Shown piece by piece: positions 186 through 21,700 of a stretch of DNA of 64,000 nucleotides (the first letter of the stretch is position 1; each line of letters opens with the position of its first letter). The notes under the pieces were generated by a model. That model did no database searches and was not told the origin of the DNA. It saw only the letters and a program-made list of their open reading frames with translations. Both the position numbers and the translations under genes were made by a program. The stretch spans positions 1-64,000 of the IMG/VR virus record IMGVR_UViG_3300017763_000002; one strand, given 5' to 3'.

Positions 186-389
186 ATGCAAGTATACGAC
201 ACACCCGAAGCAATTGATATGTTCAGATTAACCGCTCTTAAAGGAGCTTTAAAGATGGAGGTTCTTGGTATGACTCGAAGAGGTCAATCAGCTTATTCAA
301 TTGTAAAACAAGAGCTTGGACTTAAAGGCAACAAGAAATCTGTACTCACAAAACTAGAACAAATCATAGAGAACGCCAAAAATGGGTAA
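186..389 (+). CDS. small hypothetical phage protein, 67 aa
   Basis: ORF track; plausible amphipathic helical sequence within the early gene block. Confidence 0.7.
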   Translation: MQVYDTPEAIDMFRLTALKGALKMEVLGMTRRGQSAYSIVKQELGLKGNKKSVLTKLEQIIENAKNG

Positions 390-1250: not shown

Positions 1251-1289
1251 GCCCCCATCCTTATTGCTAGGGTGGGGGCTTTGTTGTTG
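1251..1289 (+). terminator. intrinsic terminator
   Basis: GCCCCCATCCT-7nt loop-AGGGTGGGGGC stem (one G-U pair) followed by TTTGTTGTT. Confidence 0.7.
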
Positions 1290-1356
1290 GTAGTCAAGGC
1301 TTTGTGAAATTTTCACCCTGCCGGATTTTTGCAAATCCTTGCCGGACAACGACTTA
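1280..1356. repeat. 77-bp double-dyad element, copy A
   Basis: Two YAA-N4-TTG-N5-CAA-N4-TTR dyads start at 1280 and 1332 (52 bp apart) around a 27-bp A-tract/GC core. Confidence 0.75.
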
Positions 1357-1393
1357 GGCACTGAAAAAAATGTATTTATTAGTCATTTTATGC

Positions 1394-1421
1394 TTGCACT
1401 TTGTTTGTCTTCTGTCATAAT
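1394..1421 (+). promoter_or_regulatory. sigma70-type early promoter (leaderless)
   Basis: TTGCAC-16nt-CATAAT with TG extension; ATG 1429 is 7 nt downstream. Confidence 0.7.
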
Positions 1422-1428
1422 TATATAC

Positions 1429-1662
1429 ATGAAGATTAATGATAACAATCCACCATTCGACCCAAACGCAGAAGATGCAGTGCATGCTATCTTGGATGTT
1501 CTTAACGAAATGTTTATTCAACCTGCCTACAACGCAGGCGAGATTGACTCAGAAGATGAAGAAGTTCTCTTCAACATTCTTGGTGCAATGAAGATCATCG
1601 GGCAAAAAGCAAGAGCTTACGAAATTATAGAAGATCAAGATTCTTCCCTTTATCGTAATTAA
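1429..1662 (+). CDS. acidic hypothetical protein, 77 aa (start refined from 1339)
   Basis: MKINDNNPPFDPNAEDAVHAIL...; the start fits the promoter position. Confidence 0.7.
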   Translation: MKINDNNPPFDPNAEDAVHAILDVLNEMFIQPAYNAGEIDSEDEEVLFNILGAMKIIGQKARAYEIIEDQDSSLYRN

Positions 1663-1666
1663 TTGC

Positions 1667-1695
1667 TTGACTTTTACTATATATTCACTTATACT
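1667..1695 (+). promoter_or_regulatory. sigma70-type promoter
   Basis: TTGACT-17nt-TATACT; A-rich leader without an SD to ATG 1735. Confidence 0.75.
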
Positions 1696-1734
1696 TATAT
1701 TATAACAATCGAAAATCCTAAACTTAAAAAAAAT

Positions 1735-2532
1735 ATGTTAGATACAACTCAAGAAACCCCTCGTCTTAACCTCCGCATTTGCGGTAATCGCTCATCCATT
1801 GTTGATATGGACGCTGTTCGCAGAGTACCAACTCCGCAACCAACCAACAGATGGAAACCAATCCCGCACTCAAAAGTTGTAGATGTTACTCGCAACAATC
1901 TTGAAGATAAAGGTTTTGAGATTCTCAATGAATGTCACAATGTCACCAAAGGCGGTGAGCATTACTTTGGAATGTTTCAAGTTAATCATGCAGACCTTTC
2001 CGACAATGGCGGTGAGCGTGGTTGTGTAGTTGGCATGAGAAATTCACATGACAAACTTTTCGCAGCAGGTTTGTGTGCAGGTGACGCTCCATTTATTTGC
2101 GACAATCTCATCTTTCACAATGAAGTTGTTTTCACTCGCAAGCATGTCGGAGATGTAAACAAAGAACTCGTAGATCGAGTGCAAAAGATCACCGAGTATC
2201 TCATCCCAATGTGGACTCGCCAAAACGATAGAGTTGCATCTTACAAAGAGGTGGCACTCAATGATCGTGAAGCCCAACATCTTATTTTCGATGTTTACGA
2301 GGCAGGAATCAAGACCAATCTTATTGGCAAATCCCTTCCTACCCAAGCGTGGGAGCAATGGAAAAGTTCCGATCACAAAGTCTTTCAAGATCGTAACCTC
2401 AATTCGCTTTACAACGCTTTTACCGAAGTGAGCAAAGGACGCAATGTCATGCACTTGCCCAAAAGATCAGAAATCTTTCACAATGCTTTTGATCCTGTAG
2501 CAGGAGTAGAGTCTTTCGAGCTTGTAGCTTAA
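1735..2532 (+). CDS. DUF932 family protein (start refined from 1663)
   Basis: PTPQPTNRWKPIPH and MRNSHDKLFAAGLCAGDAPFICDNL match the DUF932 NSHD...AG...VC.N pattern. Confidence 0.7.
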   Translation: MLDTTQETPRLNLRICGNRSSIVDMDAVRRVPTPQPTNRWKPIPHSKVVDVTRNNLEDKGFEILNECHNVTKGGEHYFGMFQVNHADLSDNGGERGCVVGMRNSHDKLFAAGLCAGDAPFICDNLIFHNEVVFTRKHVGDVNKELVDRVQKITEYLIPMWTRQNDRVASYKEVALNDREAQHLIFDVYEAGIKTNLIGKSLPTQAWEQWKSSDHKVFQDRNLNSLYNAFTEVSKGRNVMHLPKRSEIFHNAFDPVAGVESFELVA

Positions 2533-2562
2533 TTTTAACACTAAAAAAAGGAAATCATAATT

Positions 2563-2790
2563 ATGAAATGCCGTAATCTCAACGAAGTATTAGACTCACG
2601 CAAGGGACGATTTGTATCTGTCCTCCTTAAAAACGGACTAAAGCGAGAGCTTTATTCCGCTAAGGTTCACGATTACAACTCCAAGGTTGTCCGCTTCAAG
2701 GACACCAATGGAGGTGAGCGTAGGGTCAGCAGATCTAAGATTGTAAGGGTAAAGGTCGCAGAGCGTGCCTTTAAGCGTACAAGAGCTTAG
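2563..2790 (+). CDS. basic hypothetical protein, 75 aa (small beta-barrel-like)
   Basis: ORF track; followed by a terminator. Confidence 0.7.
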   Translation: MKCRNLNEVLDSRKGRFVSVLLKNGLKRELYSAKVHDYNSKVVRFKDTNGGERRVSRSKIVRVKVAERAFKRTRA

Positions 2791-2806
2791 GTCAAATACC
2801 TAACCT

Positions 2807-2839
2807 AAAAAGCCCCTTGTGAAAGCAAGGGGTTTTTTT
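2807..2839 (+). terminator. intrinsic terminator
   Basis: CCCCTTGT-GAAA-GCAAGGGG hairpin followed by T7, preceded by an A-run. Confidence 0.9.
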
Positions 2840-2840
2840 G

Positions 2841-2917
2841 TATCTTGTTGTCTTGGAGTGACTTGCGAAATTTCCGGCCCGTAAATTTTTCGCAAGTTAT
2901 TGATAGTGATAGGTTTA
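2841..2917. repeat. 77-bp double-dyad element, copy B
   Basis: Dyads start at 2841 and 2893 (52 bp apart); core CGAAATTTCCGGCCCGTAAATTTTTCG. Confidence 0.7.
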
Positions 2918-2934
2918 TGTGTGAAAAAAAAGTG

Positions 2935-2962
2935 TTGACACGCTCGGTCTATATGTTATTAT
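2935..2962 (+). promoter_or_regulatory. sigma70-type early promoter (leaderless)
   Basis: A-tract, then TTGACA-16nt-TATTAT with TG extension; ATG 2969 is 6 nt downstream. Confidence 0.8.
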
Positions 2963-2968
2963 ATAGAT

Positions 2969-3385
2969 ATGATTAGAACAAAACCAGACTCTCGCTACGA
3001 CATCGACTATGACCGAAAGGTGTTCGTATACAAAAACCTTCATAAGAATTGCTGGAGCGTTCGCCAGGACGGATTAGTCAAGGCTCATTCGGATGGATCT
3101 CCAATTTCTATATATTCAGCAACAATGAAGGTGAACCAAAAAGGTCGTGAGCGTGTGATTCGTGAAAAGAGCAAGAATGTTCATGCCGGTGTCTCAGGCT
3201 ATCTTCGCTTTTACCTAGACACTGTGTGGCACGGATGGGTTGACATGGTCGAGATAACATACAATCCTTACAAGTATGAGTCTTTTGTACATGTCCAAAA
3301 CAAAAAGCCAAGATGGTTTGCCAGTATTTGCAAACTTTATCAAGATAAAGTTCTAGTTGAGGCTATTCGGGGCTTGACAGATTAA
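2969..3385 (+). CDS. conserved phage hypothetical protein, 138 aa
   Basis: VYKNLHKNCWSVR...GRERVIREKSKNVHA, a motif I recall from a widespread uncharacterised phage family. Confidence 0.75.
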   Translation: MIRTKPDSRYDIDYDRKVFVYKNLHKNCWSVRQDGLVKAHSDGSPISIYSATMKVNQKGRERVIREKSKNVHAGVSGYLRFYLDTVWHGWVDMVEITYNPYKYESFVHVQNKKPRWFASICKLYQDKVLVEAIRGLTD

Positions 3386-3402
3386 TTTATTTTCATTAGT
3401 AT
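3374..3402 (+). promoter_or_regulatory. sigma70-type early promoter (leaderless)
   Basis: TTGACA-17nt-TAGTAT; ATG 3409 is 6 nt downstream; the -35 lies in the last codons of the upstream gene. Confidence 0.8.
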
Positions 3403-3408
3403 AGTATC

Positions 3409-4146
3409 ATGATTAAAACAACACTTCTCACATCAGGCAATCAAAAAATTCTCAAAGGAGAAAAAATGGGTTACATTACGAAAGGCATTCATCTTGCCCC
3501 AGCAAATCTTGCGGGCTACGAAGTTTGTCGTTGGCGTTCCAAAGGATGCACAATGTCTTGTCTTAACACAGCAGGTCGTGGTCAAATGAATAGCGTTCAG
3601 CAATCACGCATTGCAAAGACAAAGTTATTCTTTGAGCGTAAAGCTGAGTTTATGACTAAGCTATGCAAAGAGATTACAAGCACTTACCGCTCGGCTCTCA
3701 AGAAAGAAATGCAAGCTGTTTTCCGTCTCAATCTTACAAGTGACATTTCATGGGAAGATGTTCAGCTATTTAAAGGCTCAAACATTTTTAAGCACTTTGA
3801 GGGCATTCAGTTCTACGATTATACTAAGTCATTCAAAAGAATGTGTTCTTTCCTCGATAAGCCGTTCATCAAGGGCGAAGCAAAGTTTCCTTCCAATTAT
3901 CATTTAACCTTCTCTCGTAGTGAAAACAACGACAAGAAGTGTGAGATGGTTCTTGCTATGGGTGGCAATGTTGCGGTTGTATTTCGCAATCAGTTGCCTA
4001 AGACTTGGAAAGGTTACGAGGTTGTCAATGGTGATGATACTGACTTGCGTTTTCTTGACAGCCGTGGTGTTGTTGTTGGTCTTATTGAAAAGGGCATGGC
4101 AAAGAAAGATTCCACAGGCTTTGTGCAAGAAGGTATTGACTCCTAA
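3409..4146 (+). CDS. GP88 family phage protein (radical-SAM-like Cys triad)
   Basis: VCRWRSKGCTMSCLNTAGRG, FRLNLTSDI, FYDYTK, YHLTFS, GDDTDLRFLD and KGMAKKD motifs typical of GP88. Confidence 0.8.
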   Translation: MIKTTLLTSGNQKILKGEKMGYITKGIHLAPANLAGYEVCRWRSKGCTMSCLNTAGRGQMNSVQQSRIAKTKLFFERKAEFMTKLCKEITSTYRSALKKEMQAVFRLNLTSDISWEDVQLFKGSNIFKHFEGIQFYDYTKSFKRMCSFLDKPFIKGEAKFPSNYHLTFSRSENNDKKCEMVLAMGGNVAVVFRNQLPKTWKGYEVVNGDDTDLRFLDSRGVVVGLIEKGMAKKDSTGFVQEGIDS

Positions 4147-4163
4147 TCTCAATTTGATATAAT
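4136..4163 (+). promoter_or_regulatory. sigma70-type early promoter (leaderless)
   Basis: TTGACT-16nt-TATAAT; ATG 4170 is 6 nt downstream. Confidence 0.85.
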
Positions 4164-4169
4164 TAAGTT

Positions 4170-4379
4170 ATGAAAAAGACAAAATTTATCTTAACATTAT
4201 CTAACGATAGCATTCCCATCATAGCGGAGGTTTGTGCCTTGAGGGTATTAGAAAGTGATGAAAAAGTATTGGGAAGAGCTTGTGTTATGGAAAATGTAAA
4301 AAAGAAAAACTTTATCGACATAACAAGAAAAGCCAATTATAAAGAAGGAAAGTTATATGCCCAGGCAGACTATGTATAA
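4170..4379 (+). CDS. hypothetical protein, 69 aa
   Basis: ORF track; own promoter; last gene of the rightward early block. Confidence 0.7.
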   Translation: MKKTKFILTLSNDSIPIIAEVCALRVLESDEKVLGRACVMENVKKKNFIDITRKANYKEGKLYAQADYV

Positions 4380-4411
4380 ATAGCCAAATAGAGCAAATAA
4401 ATAGCCAAATA
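4378..4411. repeat. 13-bp direct repeat AAATAGCCAAATA x2
   Basis: Exact copies at 4378-4390 and 4399-4411, 21 bp apart. Confidence 0.7.
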
Positions 4412-4438
4412 CATTATTTTTTTAATCATATCAATCTG

Positions 4439-4515
4439 TAAGTCGTTGAAGTTCAATGGCTTGCAGATTTTTTGCCCCGTCAGTTTTTTGCAAACTGTTG
4501 GCTATCAGCGTTTTA
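4439..4515. repeat. 77-bp double-dyad element, copy C
   Basis: TAAGTCGTTG-AAGTT-CAATGGCTTG, 27-bp core, CAAACTGTTG-GCTAT-CAGCGTTTTA; sits at the convergence of the two early blocks. Confidence 0.8.
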
Positions 4516-4517
4516 GG

Positions 4518-4598
4518 TTAACGCTTTAGAGTAGGATAGAATAATTCTTTGATGCCACCGATCACGCACGAAACGAGAAAAATTGTAATCAATTCCAT
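4518..4598 (-). CDS. 26-aa hydrophobic micropeptide (not in ORF track)
   Basis: MELITIFLVSCVIGGIKELFYPTLKR; the start overlaps the upstream stop (TAATG). Confidence 0.55.
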   Translation of the reverse strand: MELITIFLVSCVIGGIKELFYPTLKR

Positions 4599-4813
4599 TA
4601 CTTAGATAGTTCTAGCTTGCGGTTGTCAAGGATGAATCCGATTACTTTATTGACTCTTTCGATTGACTTGTCAATGGTTCTTTGGGCGTGTTCGCTCGCT
4701 TCCATCTCCTGAAGTAGATTACGCAAGAACTTGAGTTCTCCGTTTGTCGTTGCTAATTCCATCGCTGTTTTGTCAACAAGCTTTGGATCTTCTAGTTTTT
4801 CGATTAATTCCAT
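4598..4813 (-). CDS. helical hypothetical protein, 71 aa
   Basis: ORF track; leaderless promoter upstream. Confidence 0.75.
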   Translation of the reverse strand: MELIEKLEDPKLVDKTAMELATTNGELKFLRNLLQEMEASEHAQRTIDKSIERVNKVIGFILDNRKLELSK

Positions 4814-4819
4814 GATATT

Positions 4820-4847
4820 ATTATGAATGAATGAGTTTAAAAGTCAA
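4820..4847 (-). promoter_or_regulatory. sigma70-type early promoter (leaderless)
   Basis: TTGACT-16nt-CATAAT; ATG 4813 is 6 nt downstream. Confidence 0.8.
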
Positions 4848-4850
4848 GAC

Positions 4851-5312
4851 TTATTTAAGCTCCCAAAGTTCGGGATGAGAATCCCAATGGAAGACAAACC
4901 TGCCTTGATTTTGTTGTGCAAAGTCAATCTCGAATTGAGAAGGCTCAACACCAAAACGCAAACGAAAGTTTGCTTCCGAAGCTGAAATGCCAAGCTCTTT
5001 TTTAAGCTTAACAACTTCGCCCATGCGTGGACGAGCAAGCTTATTTTTGAAAGTCTTTTCAAGCTTTGGAGCTTTTGGGGCAAAGGTTGTGGAGTCAACT
5101 TGGAAACGCTCAGGAGCAGATTCATTCCAAAGAGTAGCAACTTCGGCAGGGTCTTTGCCGTTTGCAACAAGCTTGTGAGCCATTGACTCAAGACGCTTTT
5201 GGGAGTCAACCCCACGAGTCCAAACTGAGTGGTCGTCAGCGTAGTTGTAGAACCAGTCATGTCCTTGCAAGGCGTTTATAAAGTTGGAGAGAGTATTATC
5301 AATTTTAATCAT
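4851..5312 (-). CDS. hypothetical protein, 153 aa
   Basis: ORF track; LQGHDWFYNYADDHSVWTRG resembles a recurrent phage motif (HDW.Y.YSDD..VW..G). Confidence 0.75.
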   Translation of the reverse strand: MIKIDNTLSNFINALQGHDWFYNYADDHSVWTRGVDSQKRLESMAHKLVANGKDPAEVATLWNESAPERFQVDSTTFAPKAPKLEKTFKNKLARPRMGEVVKLKKELGISASEANFRLRFGVEPSQFEIDFAQQNQGRFVFHWDSHPELWELK

Positions 5313-5318
5313 ATCTAT

Positions 5319-5346
5319 ATATTAACAAGTTAAGGGTGAAAGTCAA
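5319..5346 (-). promoter_or_regulatory. sigma70-type early promoter (leaderless)
   Basis: TTGACT-16nt-TAATAT; ATG 5312 is 6 nt downstream. Confidence 0.8.
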
Positions 5347-5420
5347 GCTTTATTTTTTAAAACAAAGGCTAAAAGTATTTTTTCTCTTTCTGTGAGTTGT
5401 GTTTTATTAATCTTAATCAT
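5343..5420 (-). CDS. 25-aa micropeptide, LTEREKIL family copy 1 (not in ORF track)
   Basis: MIKINKTQLTEREKILLAFVLKNKA; own leaderless promoter; paralog at 7442-7507. Confidence 0.65.
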   Translation of the reverse strand: MIKINKTQLTEREKILLAFVLKNKA

Positions 5421-5426
5421 ACATAC

Positions 5427-5455
5427 AATGTAGCACATAAAACCTCAAAAGTCAA
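5427..5455 (-). promoter_or_regulatory. sigma70-type early promoter (leaderless)
   Basis: TTGACT-17nt-TACATT; ATG 5420 is 6 nt downstream. Confidence 0.75.
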
Positions 5456-5468
5456 GAAAAACTTTAAA

Positions 5469-5537
5469 CTATTTTATTGCACAATCCTTTTTTTGACGGG
5501 GTATTTTTTTTGCAAACCCTTGCCAGTCAATGATTTA
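5469..5537. repeat. half element (one dyad) plus 29-bp repeat
   Basis: CTATTTTATTGCACAATCCTTTTTTTGAC at 5469-5497 is identical to 6641-6669; dyad CAAACCCTTG-CCAGT-CAATGATTTA at 5513-5537. Confidence 0.75.
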
Positions 5538-5621
5538 CCAAGGTTTTTCTTCGGTCATTATATCTTTCCACATGATGTAGAATACGATAATCCAAGGAGA
5601 GAATAGGATAAGTTCGATCAT
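5535..5621 (-). CDS. 28-aa single-TM micropeptide (not in ORF track)
   Basis: MIELILFSPWIIVFYIMWKDIMTEEKPW; starts 4 nt after the upstream stop; its TAA is the outer half-site of the dyad. Confidence 0.6.
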   Translation of the reverse strand: MIELILFSPWIIVFYIMWKDIMTEEKPW

Positions 5622-5625
5622 GATG

Positions 5626-5841
5626 TTATTTTTTGCGTTGTTCGTGCAGTATCACTTGAAACTTCTTGCGAGCTTCTTGCACTGCATTGAGAGCGTCAAG
5701 AATAGCCATTCCTTGCGTCATTGTGCCTTGCCATTCGGGCGAGTTTGATACTTCAGCTAAGAAGTTGAGGTTGCCCTCGGCTTTAGATAGAGCTAGACCC
5801 ATGTCTAGTTCTGGGAAGTCCATTGCTTTCGATTCGTTCAT
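5626..5841 (-). CDS. helical hypothetical protein, 71 aa
   Basis: ORF track; leaderless promoter upstream. Confidence 0.75.
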   Translation of the reverse strand: MNESKAMDFPELDMGLALSKAEGNLNFLAEVSNSPEWQGTMTQGMAILDALNAVQEARKKFQVILHEQRKK

Positions 5842-5847
5842 ATTATG

Positions 5848-5876
5848 AATATAGTTTAAAAGGTTTTAAAAGTCAA
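5848..5876 (-). promoter_or_regulatory. sigma70-type early promoter (leaderless)
   Basis: TTGACT-17nt-TATATT; ATG 5841 is 6 nt downstream. Confidence 0.75.
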
Positions 5877-6154
5877 GCTTTTATTTCTGTTATTCTGTTG
5901 ATGTACCATTCGGCATTATCGCCTTCTTTACCTATAACGCCACGCTTGAATTGGACTTTGGTTTGTAGCTTGTTTACGAGAGCCTTTACCTTTCTTCTTA
6001 CTTCGTGCTTGTCTTCAGCTTGAATTTCGAAGATGTTGTTTGTCATGTGCGTATCAATGAATGAATTTGTATTAGTGTTCCACAAAGGAAGTTTTTCCTC
6101 TCGTTCTATAGAGGAGACATGAACATTTGCGATGAATTTTTTATTCTTTAACAT
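5873..6154 (-). CDS. hypothetical protein, 93 aa (start refined from 6268)
   Basis: MLKNKKFIANVHV...EIKA; starts 4 nt after the stop of 6159-6359. Confidence 0.7.
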   Translation of the reverse strand: MLKNKKFIANVHVSSIEREEKLPLWNTNTNSFIDTHMTNNIFEIQAEDKHEVRRKVKALVNKLQTKVQFKRGVIGKEGDNAEWYINRITEIKA

Positions 6155-6158
6155 TTTA

Positions 6159-6359
6159 TTATTGAAAGATGACATTGAAACGAAACTGATTGAGACCTTC
6201 GTCTCGCATGATTCTATTGAGATGAGATTCGCTTGAAGCGGTGCGAACTCGTGGGCGATCGTTGCCATCTGAGTCGATGCCTTGATCGAAGATTTTGACA
6301 GCCCAATGGGTTGACCACTTTTTTATTCTTACTTGTGTAACTTTGTTATTCTTAATCAT
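6159..6359 (-). CDS. hypothetical protein, 66 aa
   Basis: ORF track; leaderless promoter upstream. Confidence 0.7.
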   Translation of the reverse strand: MIKNNKVTQVRIKKWSTHWAVKIFDQGIDSDGNDRPRVRTASSESHLNRIMRDEGLNQFRFNVIFQ

Positions 6360-6365
6360 ATTTAC

Positions 6366-6394
6366 AATCTAATCTATTTTTTACTAAAAGTCAA
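6366..6394 (-). promoter_or_regulatory. sigma70-type early promoter (leaderless)
   Basis: TTGACT-17nt-TAGATT; ATG 6359 is 6 nt downstream. Confidence 0.8.
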
Positions 6395-6582
6395 GCTTTT
6401 TTTACATTATTTTTCATTGCAATTTTGTTTTGCAAATCCCATTCGGAAAGCCATGCCTTATTTTGTTGCAACAAGCTTTCGGCTTGCTCGCGAACTACGG
6501 CATTTTTCTCGCTGAGAATGATATCAACTAGGTCGTTGATGTCGGCTTTAACTTTTTTGATGAGTTGAATTCCTTTATCCAT
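6391..6582 (-). CDS. hypothetical protein, 63 aa
   Basis: ORF track; own promoter; ends KKA-TGA inside the next -35 box. Confidence 0.65.
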   Translation of the reverse strand: MDKGIQLIKKVKADINDLVDIILSEKNAVVREQAESLLQQNKAWLSEWDLQNKIAMKNNVKKA

Positions 6583-6588
6583 ATATAT

Positions 6589-6617
6589 AATCTAAGGGAA
6601 AAACCGGAGTAAGTCAA
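6589..6617 (-). promoter_or_regulatory. sigma70-type early promoter (leaderless)
   Basis: TTGACT-17nt-TAGATT; ATG 6582 is 6 nt downstream. Confidence 0.8.
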
Positions 6618-6640
6618 CTTTTATTTCACTTACCTTTTAG

Positions 6641-6709
6641 CTATTTTATTGCACAATCCTTTTTTTGACCCTGTGGATTTTTTGCAAATCCTTGATTATG
6701 TGTTACTTA
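6641..6709. repeat. half element (one dyad) plus 29-bp repeat
   Basis: 29-bp exact repeat of 5469-5497; dyad CAAATCCTTG-ATTAT-GTGTTACTTA at 6685-6709, whose TTA is the stop of 6707-7015. Confidence 0.75.
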
Positions 6710-7015
6710 GAACACAAGTGATTCTATGTTTTGATTAGGCACGGCAAACCAGTCGGATGGTTGAATTTTATGACCATTTAAGACAGGCTCAAAGTTGACC
6801 TGATGAACTCCGGCATTGACTATTCCGTTTACTCGCTCGCGAGTGGTTGGTGTGTTCCAGCCAGCAAGTGACCATATGACGAAACCGCTTGCGTCTCGTT
6901 TCACAATGGCGTTGCCATGTAGCCAAACGGTGTTTCCGTCTGTGCGTGTGTTGCCAACGGTCAAAGGTTGGCGGGATTCAAAGGCTGATTTGATTTGTTG
7001 TGTTACTTTTCTCAT
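6707..7015 (-). CDS. conserved phage hypothetical protein, 102 aa
   Basis: VWLHGNAIV...SLAGWNTPTTRERVNGI resembles a recurrent phage early-protein motif (LHGN.IA...GW.T.TT..RLN). Confidence 0.75.
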   Translation of the reverse strand: MRKVTQQIKSAFESRQPLTVGNTRTDGNTVWLHGNAIVKRDASGFVIWSLAGWNTPTTRERVNGIVNAGVHQVNFEPVLNGHKIQPSDWFAVPNQNIESLVF

Positions 7016-7033
7016 TTTATATTTATTGAAGGT

Positions 7034-7219
7034 TTACATGTCGAATTGACTATGGTAGCCATAGTCGATATCCTCTTGATCGGGGAATTCATTTAAGGCA
7101 AGCAAATCGTCAAGTTCGATTTGGGCGTTTATTACTTCCTGCTGAGCTTGAACATGTCCAAGTTCGGCAATCGGCGTTTGAGTCTTGATGATCTCTTTTA
7201 GTTCTGTTATTCTATCCAT
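7034..7219 (-). CDS. hypothetical protein, 61 aa (start refined from 7279)
   Basis: MDRITELKEIIKTQTPIAELGHVQAQQEV...; the start overlaps the upstream stop. Confidence 0.65.
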   Translation of the reverse strand: MDRITELKEIIKTQTPIAELGHVQAQQEVINAQIELDDLLALNEFPDQEDIDYGYHSQFDM

Positions 7220-7409
7220 GATTTGAGATGATTGGCAATTCTGCTTGGCGAAGGTCGCTGGTCTTGTAATCCCAAACAACTTCGTTTTGTTGTATGTTGC
7301 GAGCGATCTCCATTGCTTGAGCGTGGGTCTTTGCGTTGTCTACGATTTTACCAAAGAGTCTTACATCGAACCAATTGGTAAAGTTTGGGTTTTTATCTAC
7401 ATTAATCAT
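7212..7409 (-). CDS. hypothetical protein, 65 aa
   Basis: ORF track; NPNFTNWFDVRLFGKIVDNAKT; promoter upstream. Confidence 0.7.
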   Translation of the reverse strand: MINVDKNPNFTNWFDVRLFGKIVDNAKTHAQAMEIARNIQQNEVVWDYKTSDLRQAELPIISNHG

Positions 7410-7417
7410 ATTAGTAT

Positions 7418-7445
7418 ATTCTATATATTAGAGGGTGAAAGTCAA
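7418..7445 (-). promoter_or_regulatory. sigma70-type early promoter (near-leaderless)
   Basis: TTGACT-16nt-TAGAAT; ATG 7409 is 8 nt downstream; shares TTGACTTTCACCCT with the promoter at 5346. Confidence 0.8.
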
Positions 7446-7507
7446 GCCTTTTTATTAAGGATTTTAGTGATGATGAGGATTTTTTCGCGTTCTGTGAGAT
7501 TTGTCAT
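7442..7507 (-). CDS. 21-aa micropeptide, LTEREKIL family copy 2 (not in ORF track)
   Basis: MTNLTEREKILIITKILNKKA; paralog of 5343-5420. Confidence 0.6.
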   Translation of the reverse strand: MTNLTEREKILIITKILNKKA

Positions 7508-7545
7508 TTTTATCTTTGTTATATTGTTTATCTTATTATGTATAC

Positions 7546-7574
7546 AACATACCACACCAATCGACAAAAGTCAA
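7546..7574 (-). promoter_or_regulatory. sigma70-type early promoter
   Basis: A-tracts, then TTGACT-17nt-TATGTT; A-rich leader to ATG 7507. Confidence 0.7.
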
Positions 7575-7613
7575 GTATTATTTTACTTTTTTTTACTTTT
7601 TTTTATTATTACC

Positions 7614-7690
7614 TAAGTCTTTGTGTATCCGGCACTTGTGGAAATTCGACAGGGCAAAAATCTTGCAAACTCTTGCCTATTAACGACTTA
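7614..7690. repeat. 77-bp double-dyad element, copy D
   Basis: TAAGTCTTTG-TGTAT-CCGGCACTTG, 27-bp core, CAAACTCTTG-CCTAT-TAACGACTTA; the terminal TTA is the stop of 7688-7912. Confidence 0.75.
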
Positions 7691-7912
7691 GAAGTCGTCC
7701 ATTAGTAGCTCGTCTAGTGCATAGGTGTCAAGCTCAGGGTCTTGGTAGTCTGCACCGTCGGGCGTGCTAGTAGTGCCGCATTCTACTAGATAGTTAGCTA
7801 GATCTTTATAGTGCACGAAACGCCTAGCAAGCTTGTATAAGCCTTCGTCGTTGCCTAGCCATAGGGCTACATTCCAAGTAACCCAGTTAGACCAACCATT
7901 ATACCCTTCCAT
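7688..7912 (-). CDS. conserved phage protein, 74 aa (YNGW.N..TWNVALW family)
   Basis: GYNGWSNWVTWNVALWLGNDEGLY is a recurrent phage motif. Confidence 0.8.
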   Translation of the reverse strand: MEGYNGWSNWVTWNVALWLGNDEGLYKLARRFVHYKDLANYLVECGTTSTPDGADYQDPELDTYALDELLMDDF

Positions 7913-8073
7913 TACTTCGAGGCGTTAACGGGGAAAAGACCATAACGACGAGAGCCGTCATTGTGTGCTATGCGAGAGCGTAGAAGTCGCTCGGCATCAC
8001 GCTGACGCATTGCTATGGATTCGACAACCCAAACGGCACCCGCTTGGTTGAGTATAGATTTAAGTATGTACAT
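7912..8073 (-). CDS. 53-aa hypothetical protein (not in ORF track)
   Basis: MYILKSILNQAGAVWVVESIAMRQRDAERLLRSRIAHNDGSRRYGLFPVNASK; TAATG coupling to the downstream gene. Confidence 0.55.
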   Translation of the reverse strand: MYILKSILNQAGAVWVVESIAMRQRDAERLLRSRIAHNDGSRRYGLFPVNASK

Positions 8074-8087
8074 TATTAGCCTTTCGT

Positions 8088-8384
8088 TTAGGATTCAAAG
8101 ATGTCACGCATTGCACCGCTTACGCAATTCATATCTGTTAGATTTTCGTCACTATCAAAGTCATCGTCTTCTTCTGCTTCGACTGCATCGAGAGATTCAA
8201 ACTCTCCTTCGATATCACGCTCGGATGCGTGTTGTATGCCATGCTCAAGAGTAAACTCCTCGTTTGCGATTTCTTCCTCAAGGTCATTGAGTAAGTCAGC
8301 AAACTTGCCTGTGAGTTTGTTGTTGTTCTCATTGGCGAGTTCAACGGCTTTAGCGATTAGAGAGATATTATTATCATTGTTCAT
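8088..8384 (-). CDS. very acidic hypothetical protein, 98 aa (start refined from 8420)
   Basis: D/E-rich (EAEEDDDFDSDE); the start fits the promoter at 8393-8420. Confidence 0.7.
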   Translation of the reverse strand: MNNDNNISLIAKAVELANENNNKLTGKFADLLNDLEEEIANEEFTLEHGIQHASERDIEGEFESLDAVEAEEDDDFDSDENLTDMNCVSGAMRDIFES

Positions 8385-8392
8385 AGTTATGT

Positions 8393-8420
8393 ATATTATA
8401 TTATATTGAAGTAATTGCAA
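8393..8420 (-). promoter_or_regulatory. sigma70-type early promoter (near-leaderless)
   Basis: TTGCAA-16nt-TAATAT; ATG 8384 is 8 nt downstream. Confidence 0.65.
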
Positions 8421-8582: not shown

Positions 8583-8613
8583 CAAAAACATTCAACTGTT
8601 TTACTGCACTATA

Positions 8614-10265: not shown

Positions 10266-10398
10266 TCCAAGTATAGTTCTAGATCGTTATCTATCTCACT
10301 ATGCTATCTAATAAACAATGTTTGAATCTGGCCAAATTTATGGTTTCTGTAATTTTTACTGCAATCAGCTCAATGGTAACCTATTTGAATTCAATGGT

Positions 10399-11009: not shown

Positions 11010-11591
11010 TTATTTTTTGTAGATTTGACCTATTCCTGTGTTTCTTGGGGTTTCCCAGGTTTCGCCATAAGGGTCACAAGCTTTTTTAACACCTGGGCAC
11101 TTATGAAAACCATAATCATGAGTCAATATCTTGCCTCCAGGAACTACTTTATCATAAAAATGATTTAAGCAAGCTTTAGTGGGTATATAATGATCTAAGT
11201 CTAACCATAAAACAGCAATATTATTTACGTTAACTGATTGTATTGTATTTTCATCTATAAACATTGGGTATGTTCGCGGCACTTTAATATTGTTTTTTGT
11301 AAAATTATCTATCCATTTATCCAGCCCTCCAGCGTTGAACTCTCCTGCAAAGCATGGGTTTTCACACATATCTTCTTCTGCTGGTGGCGCTAAACCTTCA
11401 AACGAATCAATAGCGTGGTATTCTCGTTCTGGAGAAGTTAAAGTCATTGACATTACATCTCCTCCTAAATATGTGCCAGCAATAACAACATTACCTTGAG
11501 GAGCGAAAGCAACAGTATTAATTAGATGATTGATTTCATATACAGTAAGAGCAGTATATTCTTTAATTTGATTATATATATTGTTTGTCAT
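11010..11591 (-). CDS. TylF/MycF-like sugar O-methyltransferase (start refined from 11624)
   Basis: GNVVIAGTYLGG, IDSFEGL, LWLDLDHYIPTK and PGGKILTHDYG motifs; ATGA overlap with the upstream gene. Confidence 0.8.
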   Translation of the reverse strand: MTNNIYNQIKEYTALTVYEINHLINTVAFAPQGNVVIAGTYLGGDVMSMTLTSPEREYHAIDSFEGLAPPAEEDMCENPCFAGEFNAGGLDKWIDNFTKNNIKVPRTYPMFIDENTIQSVNVNNIAVLWLDLDHYIPTKACLNHFYDKVVPGGKILTHDYGFHKCPGVKKACDPYGETWETPRNTGIGQIYKK

Positions 11592-18189: not shown

Positions 18190-18726
18190 ATGAAAATTTT
18201 AGGCAAAAACGGTTATGTTAGAGATGTTACGGACGCTGATGTTTTAGAGCTTTCGGCTCATCCACGAGACGTAGACCAAAGGCATTCTCAGTATTTAGGC
18301 TGGGAAAATTACCACGAGCACATAATTAATACTTTTCATTCTTCTAAGCGGAGTTTAGCCTTTTGTTTCAGCGATGGAACTTTAGTCGGATGTACAGGAG
18401 TGCACGACTCCCCACACGCCCGAGTCGGAGGCGTCTGGGCATTAGGAACTAAAAACTCTTTAGATATTCTAGACTTCAAAGGCAGCTTAAAAAAAAGTTA
18501 TGGCAATTTAAAGTCTATTTTAGGTGTTTATGAATTTATGAAAATATCCAGGGAGCATTTCGATTGGCTTTTCGGAGAAGATTTTGATGTTTTGTTAAAC
18601 ATTGTTGAAAAAAATAACAAATTAGGACAGAGATGGTTGCGTTTTTTGGGAGCAGAAATCACGCCTAAAGACGACCGCTTTTGTCAAGTAACATTTTATA
18701 AAAATGGGCGGCGGAGTACATATTGA
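18190..18726 (+). CDS. GNAT-fold protein similar to T7 gp13/DUF2833
   Basis: LLNIVEKNNKLGQRWLRFLGAEI matches the N.V...N....RWL..LG.F pattern; GTGTA at 18164. Confidence 0.55.
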   Translation: MKILGKNGYVRDVTDADVLELSAHPRDVDQRHSQYLGWENYHEHIINTFHSSKRSLAFCFSDGTLVGCTGVHDSPHARVGGVWALGTKNSLDILDFKGSLKKSYGNLKSILGVYEFMKISREHFDWLFGEDFDVLLNIVEKNNKLGQRWLRFLGAEITPKDDRFCQVTFYKNGRRSTY

Positions 18727-21700
18727 TTTTAATCTAGATTTCTTATCTGCAGATCCTACATCCAACTCTGCCAAAAGAACATTATTCGGACACTCCAGGG
18801 CTGCCATGCCAGGAGCAATGCCGACATGGTACGGCCGTTTCAGGCAGTATGCGGTTTACGAAGTTGGGCATTTAGTTTTGCACGCGGATGACGCTGATGA
18901 TTTCTTGGCAAGAAATGAGAGGTCAGCGCCTTCTTTATCTAATTTATATGTATGCGTAAATACTAATAGAGCCGGAGATTTTCCGCCTCCTTCCTCAACC
19001 TCATGGAGATCATTGGCGGATTTGTCTAATGATTATGATACCGGAGCAAGATCAGTTCCTAGGGCTACTTTTTTAACTTCAGGAAGAATGTCTGATAATG
19101 AAATATGTTTAAATTTATTTGAATTTATTGATTTAAATTTTGTAATTTGTAATTCTACTTTCACCCCACTAAATAGCGGTTTAGACCCTATTGCTATTAA
19201 GCCTAGGGTTGGAGCCTCATTTGGAGGAGGGGTTACAAGGACTAGAAGAGAAGTGGATTTAAATTCATCGCAAGGCGGAAACTTAGAAAGGTTTACCGTG
19301 GATTATCCAGAGTATGCTATTTCGGGCACAGGGCAGATTCCCTTGCCTAGTAGAAAATTTGGTTTTGCGGCAACTTCTTTAAATGCACAAATGGGTTCAG
19401 AAATTGAAGCTCTTAATCCAACGAATGACCCGCTAGATCCAGATTTGACTGCAAATTCTTTTGACTCTTCTGTGGTTTATGAAGTTGGAAGCGTAGTGAA
19501 TTATTTTCCAATAGCTGATAATCAAAGCTTAGAGTCTGAAGTTTTTGATACGACTAACCACCCAAAGCTATCTGTGTGTATTAAAAATCTAGAATCTCCA
19601 GCAAGAGATCAAAACGGAACTTATGATACAAGCAAGCTCCCCTGGAATCAAAATTCGACTTACTGGAGGTCATATACATCTGCGGCGAACCGACCAAATT
19701 CATCATTAAGTTCTGTTTATGAATATTTAGTTAATAAAAAAAATAGATTTCCTGCATTTACAGTTAATCCTGACCCGGTAAAAAATCTATCTAACCAAAC
19801 AGTTATCAGGAATAAATCTAGAATTCGTATGAATGATTTTGGTGGCACCTCAAATATTTATGGGCACTTTTTTGTGCATTGGGCTACCGCATTACAACCT
19901 TATAGCAGGAGTAAATGCAGAACCTGGTACTCTGGGGCGTCATCGCAATCTGGCCCACATCAAGATGGGCAATATGATATTTTTATATATACTAAAAATT
20001 TGAAAAAAGACCACGGCGGCCAACCCAGGTTAGCTGTAACTTTCGGAAAAACTACTGCTATTAAATTTTTATCTGTTAGCGGAGTCTCTACATTTTCTAC
20101 AGGCACTATAAGTTCAAATACAATAAATAAATATTTAAAAGATGATAATTTTAACTCGTCAATGATTCAAGAGGTTAGTTCTGAGGCAGATATAATGCAT
20201 TATCAATATAGTAATCTCGTTCCCTCTTACTACATGGGAAGAGGTTACGTTCATGCAAGAAGAAGGGGCGGAGTTCATCCTGGCTCTAGCAAGGGCGATC
20301 GAAATTTAGGTAAATTTATATTGTTTATCGAAGATTTATTGTCTCGCCAAAGAATTGAAATGGTAACTCCTCAAATATTTTCTAATGGGAATCCCAGGCT
20401 TGGTCTTCATGGCCACTCAATTCCAACTCAAGACTGGGGAGAAACTGGGGCCACAAGAAATTATCAATATACAAAAGAAATTGTAGATGGCGGGGGTTTA
20501 ACAGATTTATTATCCACAAAAACAACTGCCACGACAGCGGCACAACCAATGCATTACTTAATAGTAGGCAACGCTTTAAGCGCAACAGACCAAGTAGCGA
20601 ATCAAGGAATAAGCTTTCAAAATCGTTTCGTAGATAGGGCTTTCAGGCCAATTATGCTGAGGACTGATGCGTTAAGCGAAGAAAGATTTTTTCATATACT
20701 TGGCTTGATGCAAACTGGATTCGTCGGGGTTGACGCCGAACTTTTTAAAAATATTACGGACCAAAATATCGACAACTTATCTGGTATAGAGAACAAAATA
20801 TGGATGGATCTTGGGGAGACGTTCCATGGCTCCCAAGGGAACCCTTTATTTAAATCAATCGCCTCTAAAATAGGCTCTTTTAAAGAAAACACACTTACGA
20901 ATCTAAACGATTTAGCTAGCTGGAGTTCATCTTCACAGTACTCTCCGCAGCAAATCACTAAAATTACCCATTCAGATTATTGGACTGCAGGAGGTGACCA
21001 GGGGAGTGCTAATTTTGTCGGACCTTGGTATTATGATGTGCAATATAATTCTGGGAGCGTTGTTTATTTGTGGCAAGACGGACAAAAAACTTATTATACC
21101 GCAGCAGCGAGTTCTAAGTCTGTTTCTCCAAAAGAATTTTTTACTTTTTACAGGGCGTCAGTGGCAAACTCAAATAAAACTCCTATCTACAATTCCAGTA
21201 TCTGGAAAAGAGTGTCAATACCTAAGGGTAATATCGGTTTCCTTAAAGGTTTTGTTTCGACTATAAACCCTTATACTTCATTGCAAGTTTTAGCTAATTC
21301 TAACCTATGGCCTCCAAGCGGAAGGCGCGCATCTAAAATTGGATTTGGCTGGAAGAGGACTTTATCTGAAGAGGGAATATTAAATCAAATCACAGAAAGC
21401 AATCAAGAGTCATATTTATCAAGCTGGACTGAAGGCGCAGAATACCAAGCGGGAGATATTATTACCGTGCAATCTGGTCCAATCGTCGCCCTTGCTCCAG
21501 ACGGAGAATACTATACTTACGAACAGTGGGTGTCTCGTTTTAATTTAAGCTCCCAAGAAGAAGAGGAAGTTTCTTTGCTGTTTTCAGAAGCAGAGGCAGT
21601 TAACCCGCTTTATGCTTTTAAGTGCTTAAAAAATACGTCTGAGGCGGATGTCAACGACCCTAAATCTTATGTAGGATTAATTCCTGGTTTTATTCCAAAT

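What the first reader, a model, noticed from the sequence alone, without database searches (positions are those of the whole stretch)
1280..7690. A recurrent 77-bp double-dyad element punctuates the early region
Seen in sequence: four full copies (1280, 2841, 4439, 7614) share exact geometry. Two 25-bp dyads YAA-N4-TTG-N5-CAA-N4-TTR start 52 bp apart (about 5 helical turns) and flank a 27-bp core of A/T-tract, GC patch, T-tract. All 16 plus-strand TTR positions are invariant, the first dyad always ends TTG, and the second always starts CAA and ends TTA. N positions diverge freely, so geometry is conserved rather than sequence. Half copies at 5513 and 6685 share a 29-bp exact flank. The element sits between transcription units: right after terminators (1251, 2807), at the convergence point (4439), or with its outer TAA serving as the upstream gene's stop (5535, 6707, 7688). 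Established: each half-site resembles the IHF consensus WATCAA-N4-TTR, and T4-type phages shuffle early genes through repeated promoter cassettes (PeSL elements). Inference: a DNA-bending/wrapping or recombination site that organises or shuffles early-gene cassettes. I do not recognise it as a named element.
Basis: partly seen in the sequence, partly recalled or inferred. Interest (0 to 1): 0.85.

Follow-up and report, generated by a model that had tools for sequence, protein, structure and literature searches.

The report
Paired-palindrome boundary element of phage early genes
A ~77-bp DNA element made of two 25-bp palindromes around a GC-rich core marks the borders between early transcription units in a large clade of uncultured aquatic phages. 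It looks like a docking site for an unidentified DNA-binding protein placed in helical register upstream of early promoters, and it occasionally serves as a cassette recombination point.

Summary
The window holds four full copies (1280, 2841, 4439, 7614) and two right halves (5491-5537, 6663-6709). The four-triplet geometry occurs 4 times against 0.06 expected. No copies lie elsewhere in 108.6 kb of the contig.

Related phages carry 8-16 copies per early region. Their consensus is clearer: TAAGTCGTTG-N5-CAACGACTTA, a GC-rich core of lineage-specific length (16-35 nt), then the same palindrome again.

The arms show no compensatory changes, so the half-sites are kept as sequence. That fits a double-stranded protein-binding site, not a hairpin. 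Each palindrome equals two inverted IHF-consensus 13-mers sharing one base.

Copies are almost always intergenic. The usual order is stop codon or terminator, element, about 30 nt of A/T-rich DNA, then a sigma-70-like -35. Element-to-promoter distances peak at 20, 30, 40 and 51 nt, which indicates helical phasing. In one lineage the core is a correctly oriented intrinsic terminator.

At least six cassette indels end in elements, but most indels do not.

Best reading: a PeSL-like terminator/promoter boundary module with paired sites for an unidentified architectural or regulatory protein. Recombination is a by-product. The binder was not found.

The parts
1251..1279 (+). Intrinsic terminator of the upstream + unit. 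Its T-tail runs into the left dyad of copy 1.
   Evidence: 11-pair stem with 8 GC pairs, tail TTTGTTGTTG.
1280..1356 (.). Element copy 1: degenerate left dyad 1280-1304, core 1305-1331, right dyad 1332-1356.
   Evidence: The matrix scores only the right dyad (22.7).
1394..1421 (+). Sigma-70-like promoter (TTGCAC, 16 nt, CATAAT) 37 nt after copy 1. The ATG at 1429 follows 7 nt after the -10.
   Evidence: Read directly. It falls below the threshold of the scan, so this is inferred.
2807..2838 (+). Intrinsic terminator in front of copy 2.
   Evidence: 14-pair stem followed by a T-run.
2841..2917 (.). Element copy 2, the most degenerate. Neither dyad reaches matrix score 12.
   Evidence: E = 4e-6.
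2935..2962 (+). Promoter TTGACA, 16 nt, TATTAT, 17 nt after copy 2. It drives the leaderless gene 2969-3385.
   Evidence: 11 of 12 matches.
4439..4515 (.). Element copy 3 at the convergence of the + arm and the - arm. No promoter on either side.
   Evidence: (dyad scores 26.6 and 16.2).
5477..5485 (-). Second boundary motif 'B' (ATTGTGCAA on the - strand), 21 nt upstream of the - strand -35 at 5455. It sits where the left dyad would be.
   Evidence: promoter.
5491..5537 (.). Half copy: core plus right dyad 5513-5537.
   Evidence: model positions 33-81; score 19.0.
6649..6657 (-). Motif B, second copy. The - strand -35 is at 6617.
   Evidence: for the motif; for the promoter; shared 29-nt flank.
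6663..6709 (.). Half copy: core plus right dyad 6685-6709. Its TTA is the stop codon of ORF 6707-7015 (-).
   Evidence: (score 12.1).
7546..7574 (-). - strand promoter TTGACT, 17 nt, TATGTT, 39 nt from the left end of copy 4.
7614..7690 (.). Element copy 4. The outer TTA at 7688-7690 is the stop codon of ORF 7688-7912 (-).
   Evidence: (scores 15.4 and 18.2).

Best explanation
The element is the protein-docking part of a composite boundary module that separates early transcription units in this phage clade.

The module reads, in the direction of transcription: stop codon and/or intrinsic terminator, distal 25-bp palindrome, GC-rich core, proximal 25-bp palindrome, 20, 30 or 40 nt of A/T-rich DNA, then a sigma-70-type promoter.

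Each palindrome offers two 10-bp half-sites (TAAGTCGTTG) to a sequence-specific, probably dimeric and DNA-bending protein. This protein could be IHF/HU-like or an unknown phage regulator.

Bound on one face of the helix, about 68, 78 or 88 bp upstream of the transcription start, the protein would tune or insulate the next early promoter. It could act as an upstream activator or bender, as a roadblock against read-through, or later as a shut-off operator.

The GC core is a lineage-specific spacer. In some lineages it is itself the terminator hairpin.

Because the module is repeated every 0.6-1.5 kb, homologous recombination between copies sometimes deletes or inserts whole cassettes.

Shown: the anatomy, the conservation pattern, the position, the phasing and the indels. 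Inferred: that a protein binds, which protein it is, and the sign of its effect.
For: - Real and non-random in the window.
- Conserved in a clade: 285 hits and 209 unique full copies in 40 related loci, plus further lineages.
- The half-site positions are nearly invariant (T11, T25, T26, A56, T63 and T77 in 209 of 209 copies). Arm-to-arm pairing is no better than independent columns predict, even at variable positions such as 6/24: 0.53 observed against 0.50 expected. No long-range Watson-Crick pair is among the top mutual-information pairs.
- The core does not fold better than shuffles: mean z = -0.43.
- 226 of 241 unique copies are intergenic, although about 75% of the DNA is coding.
- The distance from the outer dyad to the -35 peaks at 20, 30-31, 40-41 and 51 nt. 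After collapsing related flanks to 92 clusters, the circular statistic for a 10-11 bp period is 0.41-0.46. The 99.9th percentile of the null is 0.31.
- The order terminator, element, A/T spacer, promoter is seen directly.
- In the 33-nt-core lineage the core is a 7-bp GC hairpin plus TTTTG, oriented with transcription in 17 of 17 tandem contexts. Across all lineages the T-richer side lies downstream in 102 cases against 61.
- The dyad consensus equals two inverted IHF consensus 13-mers.
- The element is confined to the first 7.7 kb of the 108.6 kb of this contig that was read.
Against: - No binding protein was identified. Pfam found no HU/IHF, HTH, RHH or recombinase in the window ORFs, in 60 early-gene families of relatives, or among the called genes of contig 52-108.6 kb.
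- About 80 of 209 copies have no recognisable promoter within 60 nt, and the copy at the convergence point has none. Promoter activation therefore cannot be the only role.
- Close relatives with the same early genes have almost no dyads and use another motif instead. The element is replaceable.
- Dyad-to-dyad spacing is not helically constant between lineages.
- The window's own copies are degenerate, and all six share one orientation whatever the gene direction.
- Promoters and genes were called by simple consensus rules, and copies in relatives are not phylogenetically independent.
Confidence: 0.5

Rival explanations
1. The element is mainly a recombination module. The 25-bp dyads would be crossover sites, site-specific or hot for homologous exchange, that excise, insert and shuffle early-gene cassettes. 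This would be integron- or PeSL-like, with any regulatory effect secondary.
For: - L012 and L044 carry a 264-bp one-gene cassette between two elements. L019 and L030 have dyad-core-dyad-core-dyad at the same place, joined in register inside a dyad.
- The same triple-dyad form occurs at the convergence point of other lineages.
- 10 of about 75 indels, at least six of them independent, end in elements on both sides with a 60-88 bp overlap. About 1% would be expected by chance.
- Cores are homogeneous within a genome and different between genomes, as gene conversion would produce.
- Gene order between elements differs among lineages.
Against: - 58 of about 75 indels do not touch elements, and many are bounded by other repeats.
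- Homology breakpoints are as common in other intergenic DNA: 24.8% against 25.4%.
- Genes also move within units.
- No integrase, resolvase or transposase was detected in 108.6 kb.
- The 5-bp spacer is short for tyrosine-recombinase core sites (own knowledge).
- Recombination alone explains neither the phasing to promoters nor the invariant half-site bases.
Confidence: 0.15
2. The element acts as RNA. The dyads and core would be hairpins in the 3' ends of early mRNAs, serving as terminators, stabilisers or processing sites.
For: - The element follows stop codons and lies at 3' ends. Convergent gaps carry it in 49 of 99 cases, divergent gaps in 11 of 70.
- The core is a true oriented terminator in the 33-nt lineage.
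- Consensus arms are self-complementary.
- In four of the six window copies (1280, 4439, 5513, 6685) the 3' end of the GC patch pairs with the start of the right dyad, for example GGATTT/AAATCC, CAGTTT/AAACTG and GGGT/ACCC (read).
Against: - No compensatory substitutions in any arm pairing.
- Cores do not fold better than shuffles.
- No Rfam match.
- Where a terminator lies in front of the element or inside its core, the proximal dyad lies beyond the RNA 3' end.
- The scan lists no terminator-like site within the spans of the window copies.
- The 16-22-nt cores have no T-tract.
Confidence: 0.1
3. The element is a non-autonomous mobile element (a MITE- or REP/BIME-like palindromic unit) that has spread through intergenic DNA without benefit to the phage.
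For: - Terminal inverted structure beginning TA and ending TA.
- Many copies.
- Within-genome homogeneity of cores.
- Similar single palindromes occur in many bacterial genomes, including a repeated element in a Treponema genome bin.
Against: - Copies within a genome differ at unconstrained positions while six positions are invariant in 209 of 209 copies.
- Positions are conserved between diverged phages.
- The element stands at a fixed, phased distance from promoters.
- It is restricted to one 8-12 kb region.
- No transposase was seen.
Confidence: 0.05

Closest known systems
PeSL (promoter-early stem-loop) regulatory cassettes of T4-type phages (PMC2839356, PMC4122927)
   Same: - Repeated intergenic modules in a region of small, variable early genes.
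- Each combines a stem-loop terminator (often polyG/polyC), an A/T-rich stretch and a strong sigma-70-like early promoter.
- Recombination between copies produces cassette indels (papers read).
   Different: - PeSLs have no conserved pair of 25-bp palindromes. Here the most conserved part is the four half-sites, not the stem-loop or the promoter.
- The phage is not T4-like: it has a DnaE-type polymerase and different head genes.
- Mini-circles were not tested.
IHF binding sites upstream of promoters, such as those upstream of the phage lambda and Mu early promoters. The consensus WATCAANNNNTTR and these examples are from my own knowledge.
   Same: - The right half of each dyad matches the 13-bp consensus.
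- The site is centred about 70-90 bp upstream of a sigma-70 promoter and is helically phased.
   Different: - The site is a perfect doubling of the consensus with only one base between the two TCAA cores. Extra conserved bases (G6, T7, A23) are not part of the IHF consensus.
- There is no A/T tract 5' of the consensus.
- Sites come in pairs around a GC core.
- Whether the unknown host has IHF is not known.
BIME-1 / RIB-RIP elements of E. coli: two inverted REP palindromes around an IHF site (own knowledge)
   Same: Roughly 80-100-bp composite of palindromic units plus an IHF-type motif, repeated, extragenic and preferentially at the 3' ends of transcription units.
   Different: - The arrangement is reversed: IHF-like palindromes outside, GC core inside.
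- REP stems covary as hairpins. Here they do not.
- This is a phage early region, not a chromosome.
Phage phi29 p4/p6 nucleoprotein switch (PMC3100819, abstract seen) and SPO1 TF1 (own knowledge)
   Same: Phage systems in which a small dimeric or HU-like protein binds inverted-repeat sites upstream of early promoters. Binding bends the DNA and switches early transcription.
   Different: - Those sites occur once or a few times per genome and their binders are known.
- Here there are 8-16 copies per genome, each tied to a unit boundary, and no binder is known.
Stoperators of cluster A mycobacteriophages (own knowledge)
   Same: Many copies of a short operator at the ends of genes in intergenic DNA. 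They are thought to block transcription through a bound phage protein. This phage also carries homologues of L5 gp82 and gp88.
   Different: - Stoperators are 13-bp, asymmetric and orientation-dependent. They are bound by the immunity repressor of a temperate phage.
- Here the sites are 25-bp palindromes in pairs, and no repressor or integrase was seen.

Membership tests
IHF binding site | Match to the 13-bp consensus WATCAANNNNTTR | tested here: met
   The matrix consensus TAAGTCGTTGATTATCAACGACTTA contains the 13-mer on both strands. 156 of 836 half-sites match exactly and 450 of 836 match TCAR-N4-TTR. In the window only 3 half-sites match exactly.
IHF binding site | A/T-rich tract on the 5' side of the consensus | tested here: not met
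   The 5' side is the other half-site (TAAGTCGTTG), which is not A/T-rich.
IHF binding site | Bound and sharply bent by the host IHF heterodimer | not testable with these tools
   The host is unknown and uncultured. No HU/IHF gene was seen in 108.6 kb of the phage.
PeSL regulatory cassette | Strong sigma-70-like early promoter with an A/T-rich upstream stretch | tested here: met
PeSL regulatory cassette | Stem-loop terminator just upstream of the promoter | tested here: met
   Separate terminators at 1251 and 2807. In the 33-nt lineage the core is the terminator. This feature is absent from the - arm copies of the window.
PeSL regulatory cassette | Indels and replacements bounded by copies | tested here: met
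   At least six independent events. They are a minority of all indels.
PeSL regulatory cassette | Occurs in T4-type myoviruses, and mini-circles are formed | tested here: not met
   The phage is not T4-like: no near DNA match in GenBank phages, and its replicative polymerase is a DnaE-type Pol III alpha. Mini-circles cannot be tested here.
Integron attC or other site-specific recombination site | A cognate recombinase encoded nearby | tested here: not met
   No integrase, resolvase or transposase family in the window, in the early regions of relatives, or in contig 52-108.6 kb. The remaining 96 kb were not read.
Integron attC or other site-specific recombination site | Structure rather than sequence is conserved; cassettes are promoterless and co-oriented | tested here: not met
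   Sequence is conserved without covariation. Units have their own promoters and run in two converging arms.
REP/BIME | Imperfect palindromes maintained as hairpins through compensatory change | tested here: not met
Intrinsic terminator | GC-rich hairpin followed by a T-run on the transcribed strand | tested here: inconclusive
   Met in the 33-nt-core lineage in 17 of 17 cases. There is weak polarity overall, 102 against 61. The scan lists no terminator-like site within the spans of the window copies, and the feature is absent from 16-22-nt cores.
Known RNA family (Rfam) | Covariance-model match above the gathering score | tested here: not met
   0 matches in the window.

The most novel reading that the evidence does not exclude
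The dyads are anchor sites of a dedicated phage system with no described counterpart. One possibility is an insulator or loop-anchor protein that partitions the early region into topologically separate transcription loops. The other is a recombinase-independent or novel-recombinase cassette system in which 25-bp dyads define mobile early-gene cassettes. In-register dyad fusions, the triple-dyad junctions and within-genome homogenised cores would be its footprints.
Probability: 0.12. Interest if true: 0.85.

Novelty: new variant of a known kind. Interest (0 to 1): 0.6.

Why it matters
The element defines the regulatory grammar of the early region in an abundant, uncultured clade of roughly 200-kb aquatic phages. 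One small early protein of this clade alone has 2291 metagenomic homologues.

It is a sharply defined, testable cis-element: a 25-bp palindrome, paired, and phased to promoters. Three uses follow.
- It can be used to fish for its binding protein.
- It can annotate transcription-unit borders in metagenomic phage contigs.
- It can flag phage contigs that were mis-binned into bacterial genome bins. Four such contigs were seen.

If the binder is a host nucleoid protein, the element would also be a host-range clue. If it is a phage protein, it is a candidate master switch of early transcription.

The element also extends the PeSL idea, that repeated terminator/promoter cassettes act as engines of gene shuffling, to a phage group unrelated to T4.

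Tried and rejected
- **Rfam** on the window: no match. tRNA scan: none. Megablast against GenBank phages: none. There is no cultured relative; the polymerase is below 35% identical to known phage DnaE proteins.
- **Hairpin or cruciform hypothesis:** rejected by the covariation tests. Core folding is not above shuffles. My own terminator classifier was too strict and returned almost nothing, so only the T-count comparison from that call is used.
- **Sigma-54, Bacteroidetes-type and N4-type hairpin-promoter readings:** considered by eye and dropped because spacing or consensus did not fit.
- **Search for the binder:** Pfam and PHROG on 64 window ORFs, 31 early ORFs and 60 early families of relatives found no DNA-binding or recombinase family. 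PDB sequence searches for the three conserved early proteins (gp82-like, GP88, DUF932) were uninformative.
- **Candidate small protein:** a small basic protein (186-389) co-occurs with dyads, in 23 of 37 dyad-rich loci against 1 of 19 dyad-poor loci. Its confident three-helix model has no fold match and its homologues are unannotated. This is inconclusive, and the protein is absent from the fetched stretch (the GP88 locus with up to 8 kb of flank, or the stretch around a pattern match) in 14 dyad-rich loci.
- **Scan of 185,579 bacterial genomes for the perfect dyad:** more than 120 loci. Apart from four probably mis-binned phage contigs these are single palindromes in mixed contexts: tRNA terminators, an IS, upstream of gidA/parA, and a Treponema repeat. 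Perfect hairpins inflate the chance expectation, so no host regulon can be claimed.
- **Breakpoint enrichment by BLAST HSP ends:** none relative to other intergenic DNA.
- **Literature search by sequence words:** nothing relevant.
- **Walking the contig** with the look-up of encoding contigs reached 108.6 kb. It then met a 3418-residue gene longer than the 10-kb flank, so the last 96 kb stay unread.

Full report
**1. What is in the window.**

The window is bases 1-64000 of a 204,906-bp IMG/VR contig. The contig has no close relative among GenBank phages.

The first 8.4 kb hold small genes in two converging arms. The + genes run to 4379 and the - genes run from about 4540 to 8420. The promoters are sigma-70-like, and their -10 lies 6-7 nt before the ATG.

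The triplet pattern TTG-N12-TTG-N34-TTG-N12-TTA occurs four times (1287, 2848, 4446, 7621), all on the + strand, against 0.06 expected. Two further copies (5491-5537 and 6663-6709) have only the core and the right dyad, and they share an exact 29-nt left flank.

Terminators at 1251 and 2807 directly precede copies 1 and 2. Copies at 6685 and 7666 end in the stop codon of the upstream - strand gene.

A dyad matrix and an HMM trained mainly on relatives find nothing else in the window. They also find nothing in contig positions 52-108.6 kb.

**2. The element in relatives.**

Using the GP88-like protein (3409-4146) as a handle, 80 related loci were fetched. Iterated nhmmer found 285 copies, 209 of them unique and full length, in 40 loci. 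The typical density is 8-15 copies per 16.7 kb.

A pattern scan added further lineages, one of which has 16 elements in 9.4 kb. These loci share PhoH, GP88, gp82-like and DUF932 genes, so all of them belong to one broad phage group.

The consensus is much clearer than in the window. It reads TAAGTCGTTG, N5, CAACGACTTA, then a GC-rich core, then the same 25-bp palindrome again. Six positions are invariant in all 209 copies.

The core is lineage-specific in both length and sequence. The lengths, with the number of copies counted, are:
- 16-17 nt: 40 copies
- 21-22 nt: 23 copies
- 24-25 nt: 19 copies
- 27 nt: 98 copies
- 30 nt: 12 copies
- 35 nt: 4 copies
- 33 nt in a further group found later

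Cores are nearly uniform within a genome. Centre-to-centre spacing of the dyads therefore ranges from about 41 to 60 bp. It is not a constant number of helical turns.

**3. DNA site or folded strand?**

For every possible pairing (within each dyad, between the inner arms, between the outer arms) the observed fraction of Watson-Crick or G-T pairs equals the expectation from independent columns. This holds even at positions that vary a lot, such as 6/24, 8/22 and 9/21.

The strongest mutual information is between neighbouring bases, not between complementary positions. Cores fold no better than shuffles. Rfam finds nothing.

The half-sites are therefore conserved as sequence. That is the signature of a double-stranded binding site.

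The symmetric consensus TAAGTCGTTGATTATCAACGACTTA is exactly two copies of the IHF consensus WATCAANNNNTTR (own knowledge) in inverted orientation, sharing the centre base (25 = 2 x 13 - 1). Of 836 half-sites, 19% match that consensus exactly and 54% match its core.

Extra conserved bases and the lack of a 5' A/T tract mean it cannot simply be filed as an IHF site.

**4. Where it sits.**

226 of 241 unique copies are intergenic. By a naive gene call the element is present in these gap types:
- convergent: 49 of 99
- divergent: 11 of 70
- tandem +: 109 of 451
- tandem -: 68 of 229

Gene maps show the elements delimiting multi-gene units along a + arm and a - arm that converge. One element is always at the convergence. 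None lie in the block of small genes upstream of the first element.

Reading flanks directly gives a consistent order:
- The upstream gene ends, often followed by a canonical terminator. In the - arm its stop codon is often the outer TAA of the element.
- Then comes the element.
- Then comes an A/T-rich stretch.
- Then come the -35 and -10.

The distance from the last conserved base of the outer dyad to the first base of the -35 peaks at 20, 30-31, 40-41 and 51 nt.

After collapsing similar flanks into 92 clusters, the peaks remain. The circular statistic for a 10-11 bp period is 0.41-0.46, against 0.31 for the 99.9th percentile of random spacings.

With a 17-bp spacer this puts the proximal dyad centre near -68, -78 or -88. 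This is the range used by upstream activators and bending proteins (own knowledge).

In several lineages the element is polar, with the promoter on the model-left side. The spacing there is 30 nt in the + arm and 40 nt in the - arm.

About 80 of 209 copies have no recognisable promoter nearby, including those at the convergence point.

**5. The core.**

In the lineage with 33-nt cores the core is a 7-bp GC hairpin with a variable 3-nt loop, followed by TTTTG. The T-run is downstream with respect to the flanking genes in 17 of 17 tandem contexts. There the core is an intrinsic terminator standing between the two dyads.

Over all lineages the T-richer side is downstream in 102 cases against 61. 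Cores of 16-22 nt have no T-run at all.

The scan lists no terminator-like site within the spans of the window copies. All six window copies carry their T-tracts on the + strand whatever the gene direction.

The universal part of the element is therefore the dyads. The core is a variable spacer that can double as a terminator.

**6. Recombination.**

L012 and L044 have a 264-bp cassette (promoter plus one small gene) between two elements. L019 and L030 lack it and show dyad-core-dyad-core-dyad, joined in register within a dyad.

A chain analysis of BLAST alignments found about 75 distinct indels inside element-bearing regions. Ten of them, at least six independent, end in elements at both sides with 60-88 bp of shared sequence. 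About 1% would be expected by chance. The other 58 do not touch an element at either end, and many are bounded by other repeats.

Ends of homology are enriched in intergenic DNA generally, but not in elements relative to other intergenic DNA. No recombinase family was detected.

The elements therefore do act as cassette borders now and then. The pattern is what homologous recombination between any nearby repeats gives, as described for PeSLs (PMC2839356, PMC4122927).

**7. Replaceability.**

Eleven close relatives have the same early genes but almost no dyads. One of them has a GP88 87% identical to the window's.

Several of their boundaries carry another motif instead, ATTGTGCAA. It lies exactly 21 nt upstream of the -35 in 27 of 48 cases and follows polyG/polyC or other GC hairpins.

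The window's two half copies are hybrids. Motif B (5477-5485 and 6649-6657) stands where the left dyad would be.

Turnover of the motif between near relatives favours a phage-encoded binder, or at least shows that the dyads are one of several interchangeable upstream modules.

**8. The binder.**

The binder was not found. Pfam and PHROG scans of window ORFs and of 60 early-gene families in relatives show no HU/IHF, HTH, RHH or recombinase. The called genes of contig 52-108.6 kb show none either. Those genes are replication, nucleotide-metabolism and tail-fibre-like genes.

The best statistical associate is a 67-residue basic protein (186-389). It is present in 23 of 37 dyad-rich loci and in 1 of 19 dyad-poor loci. 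Its confident three-helix model matches no known fold, and its 2291 homologues are unannotated.

The perfect dyad also occurs in many bacterial genomes. Apart from four probably mis-binned phage contigs, those are single palindromes in mixed contexts, and they cannot be separated from chance hairpins with the data in hand.

**9. Verdict.**

The most likely function is a paired protein-binding site embedded in a PeSL-like terminator/promoter boundary module. It would organise and insulate early transcription units and be phased to the next promoter. Recombination between copies is a side effect that shuffles cassettes.

My confidence is about 0.5 for the protein-binding boundary-module reading as a whole. 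It is lower for any particular binder. It is high (above 0.9) that the element is real and under selection.

Weak points:
- Promoters and genes were called by simple rules.
- Copies in relatives are not independent.
- The window's own copies are degenerate.
- 96 kb of the contig remain unread.
- Nothing here demonstrates binding.

Noticed in passing
window 18704-36391 (+): A single ORF of 5895 codons. A second giant gene of 3418 residues lies near contig positions 105.5-115.8 kb, with faint or weak CBM_5_12 and Peptidase_S74 hits.
   Followed up: no
window 2957-2971, 3397-3411, 1416-1431 and other early genes: The first genes of early units look leaderless. The -10 hexamer ends 6-7 nt before the ATG and no Shine-Dalgarno is present. 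Internal genes do have AGGA-like sites.
   Followed up: no
window 4381-4415; L012 about 4380-4480 and 10280-10380; L013 about 4100-4210; L020 about 3380-3480 and 11520-11570: Tracts of short AAATA / CAAATA(C/G) repeats flank the first element and the convergence point of the two early arms. They could be iterons or another protein array.
   Followed up: no
window 5477-5485 and 6649-6657 (degenerate copy near 8590); L029 4645, 7936 and two - strand copies: A second promoter-upstream motif, ATTGTGCAA, lies 21 nt before the -35. It is commoner in close relatives that lack the dyads, where it follows polyG/polyC hairpins.
   Followed up: partly
L021, L025-L027, L029, L031, L035, L037-L039, L041: These close relatives share the same early genes, but each has only 0-3 dyad matrix hits.
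   Followed up: partly
window 186-389 (+): A 67-residue basic protein whose presence tracks the dyads imperfectly. Its predicted three-helix fold has no structural match, and it has 2291 unannotated metagenomic homologues.
   Followed up: yes
window 58621-59889 (-) and 59906-61948 (-): DUF1501 and PSCyt2+PSD1 genes. This pair is typical of Planctomycetes and Verrucomicrobia and suggests a PVC host. The early promoters are nevertheless canonical TTGACA/TATAAT.
   Followed up: partly
L013 about 6205-6290, then element 6292-6371: A tRNA-like sequence (read by eye) is directly followed by an element. Several bacterial hits to the single dyad also lie just after tRNA genes.
   Followed up: no
L013 11980-12077, 13145-13241, 14790-14884; L012 11915-12010; L020 13640-13736: A conserved roughly 100-nt flank next to some - arm elements. 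It contains motif B and a TGGCACG-N4-CTGTA stretch that resembles a sigma-54 -24/-12 promoter pointing into the element.
   Followed up: no
L154/L183, L165, L166, L264 (contigs filed under bacterial genome bins): These short contigs carry arrays of full double-dyad elements (up to 9 in 8 kb). They are probably phage contigs mis-binned into Enterobacterales, Rhodobacteraceae and Bdellovibrionota bins; the bin behind L264 was not seen (its row was cut from the output).
   Followed up: partly
L149, L157, L160, L175, L177, L179, L181, L194, L195, L200-L202, L204, L205, L209, L212, L222, L224: The perfect 25-bp dyad is over-represented in GC-rich Gemmatimonadota genomes (about 18 of the 120 loci returned). 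Sites include ones upstream of parA/gidA and next to ssb. The meaning is unknown.
   Followed up: partly
element columns 24 and 58 (alignment): The two inner half-sites tend to carry the same base rather than complementary bases at these mirror positions (GAGTTA...TAAGTC or GACTTA...TAACTC). This gives the element a built-in polarity.
   Followed up: no
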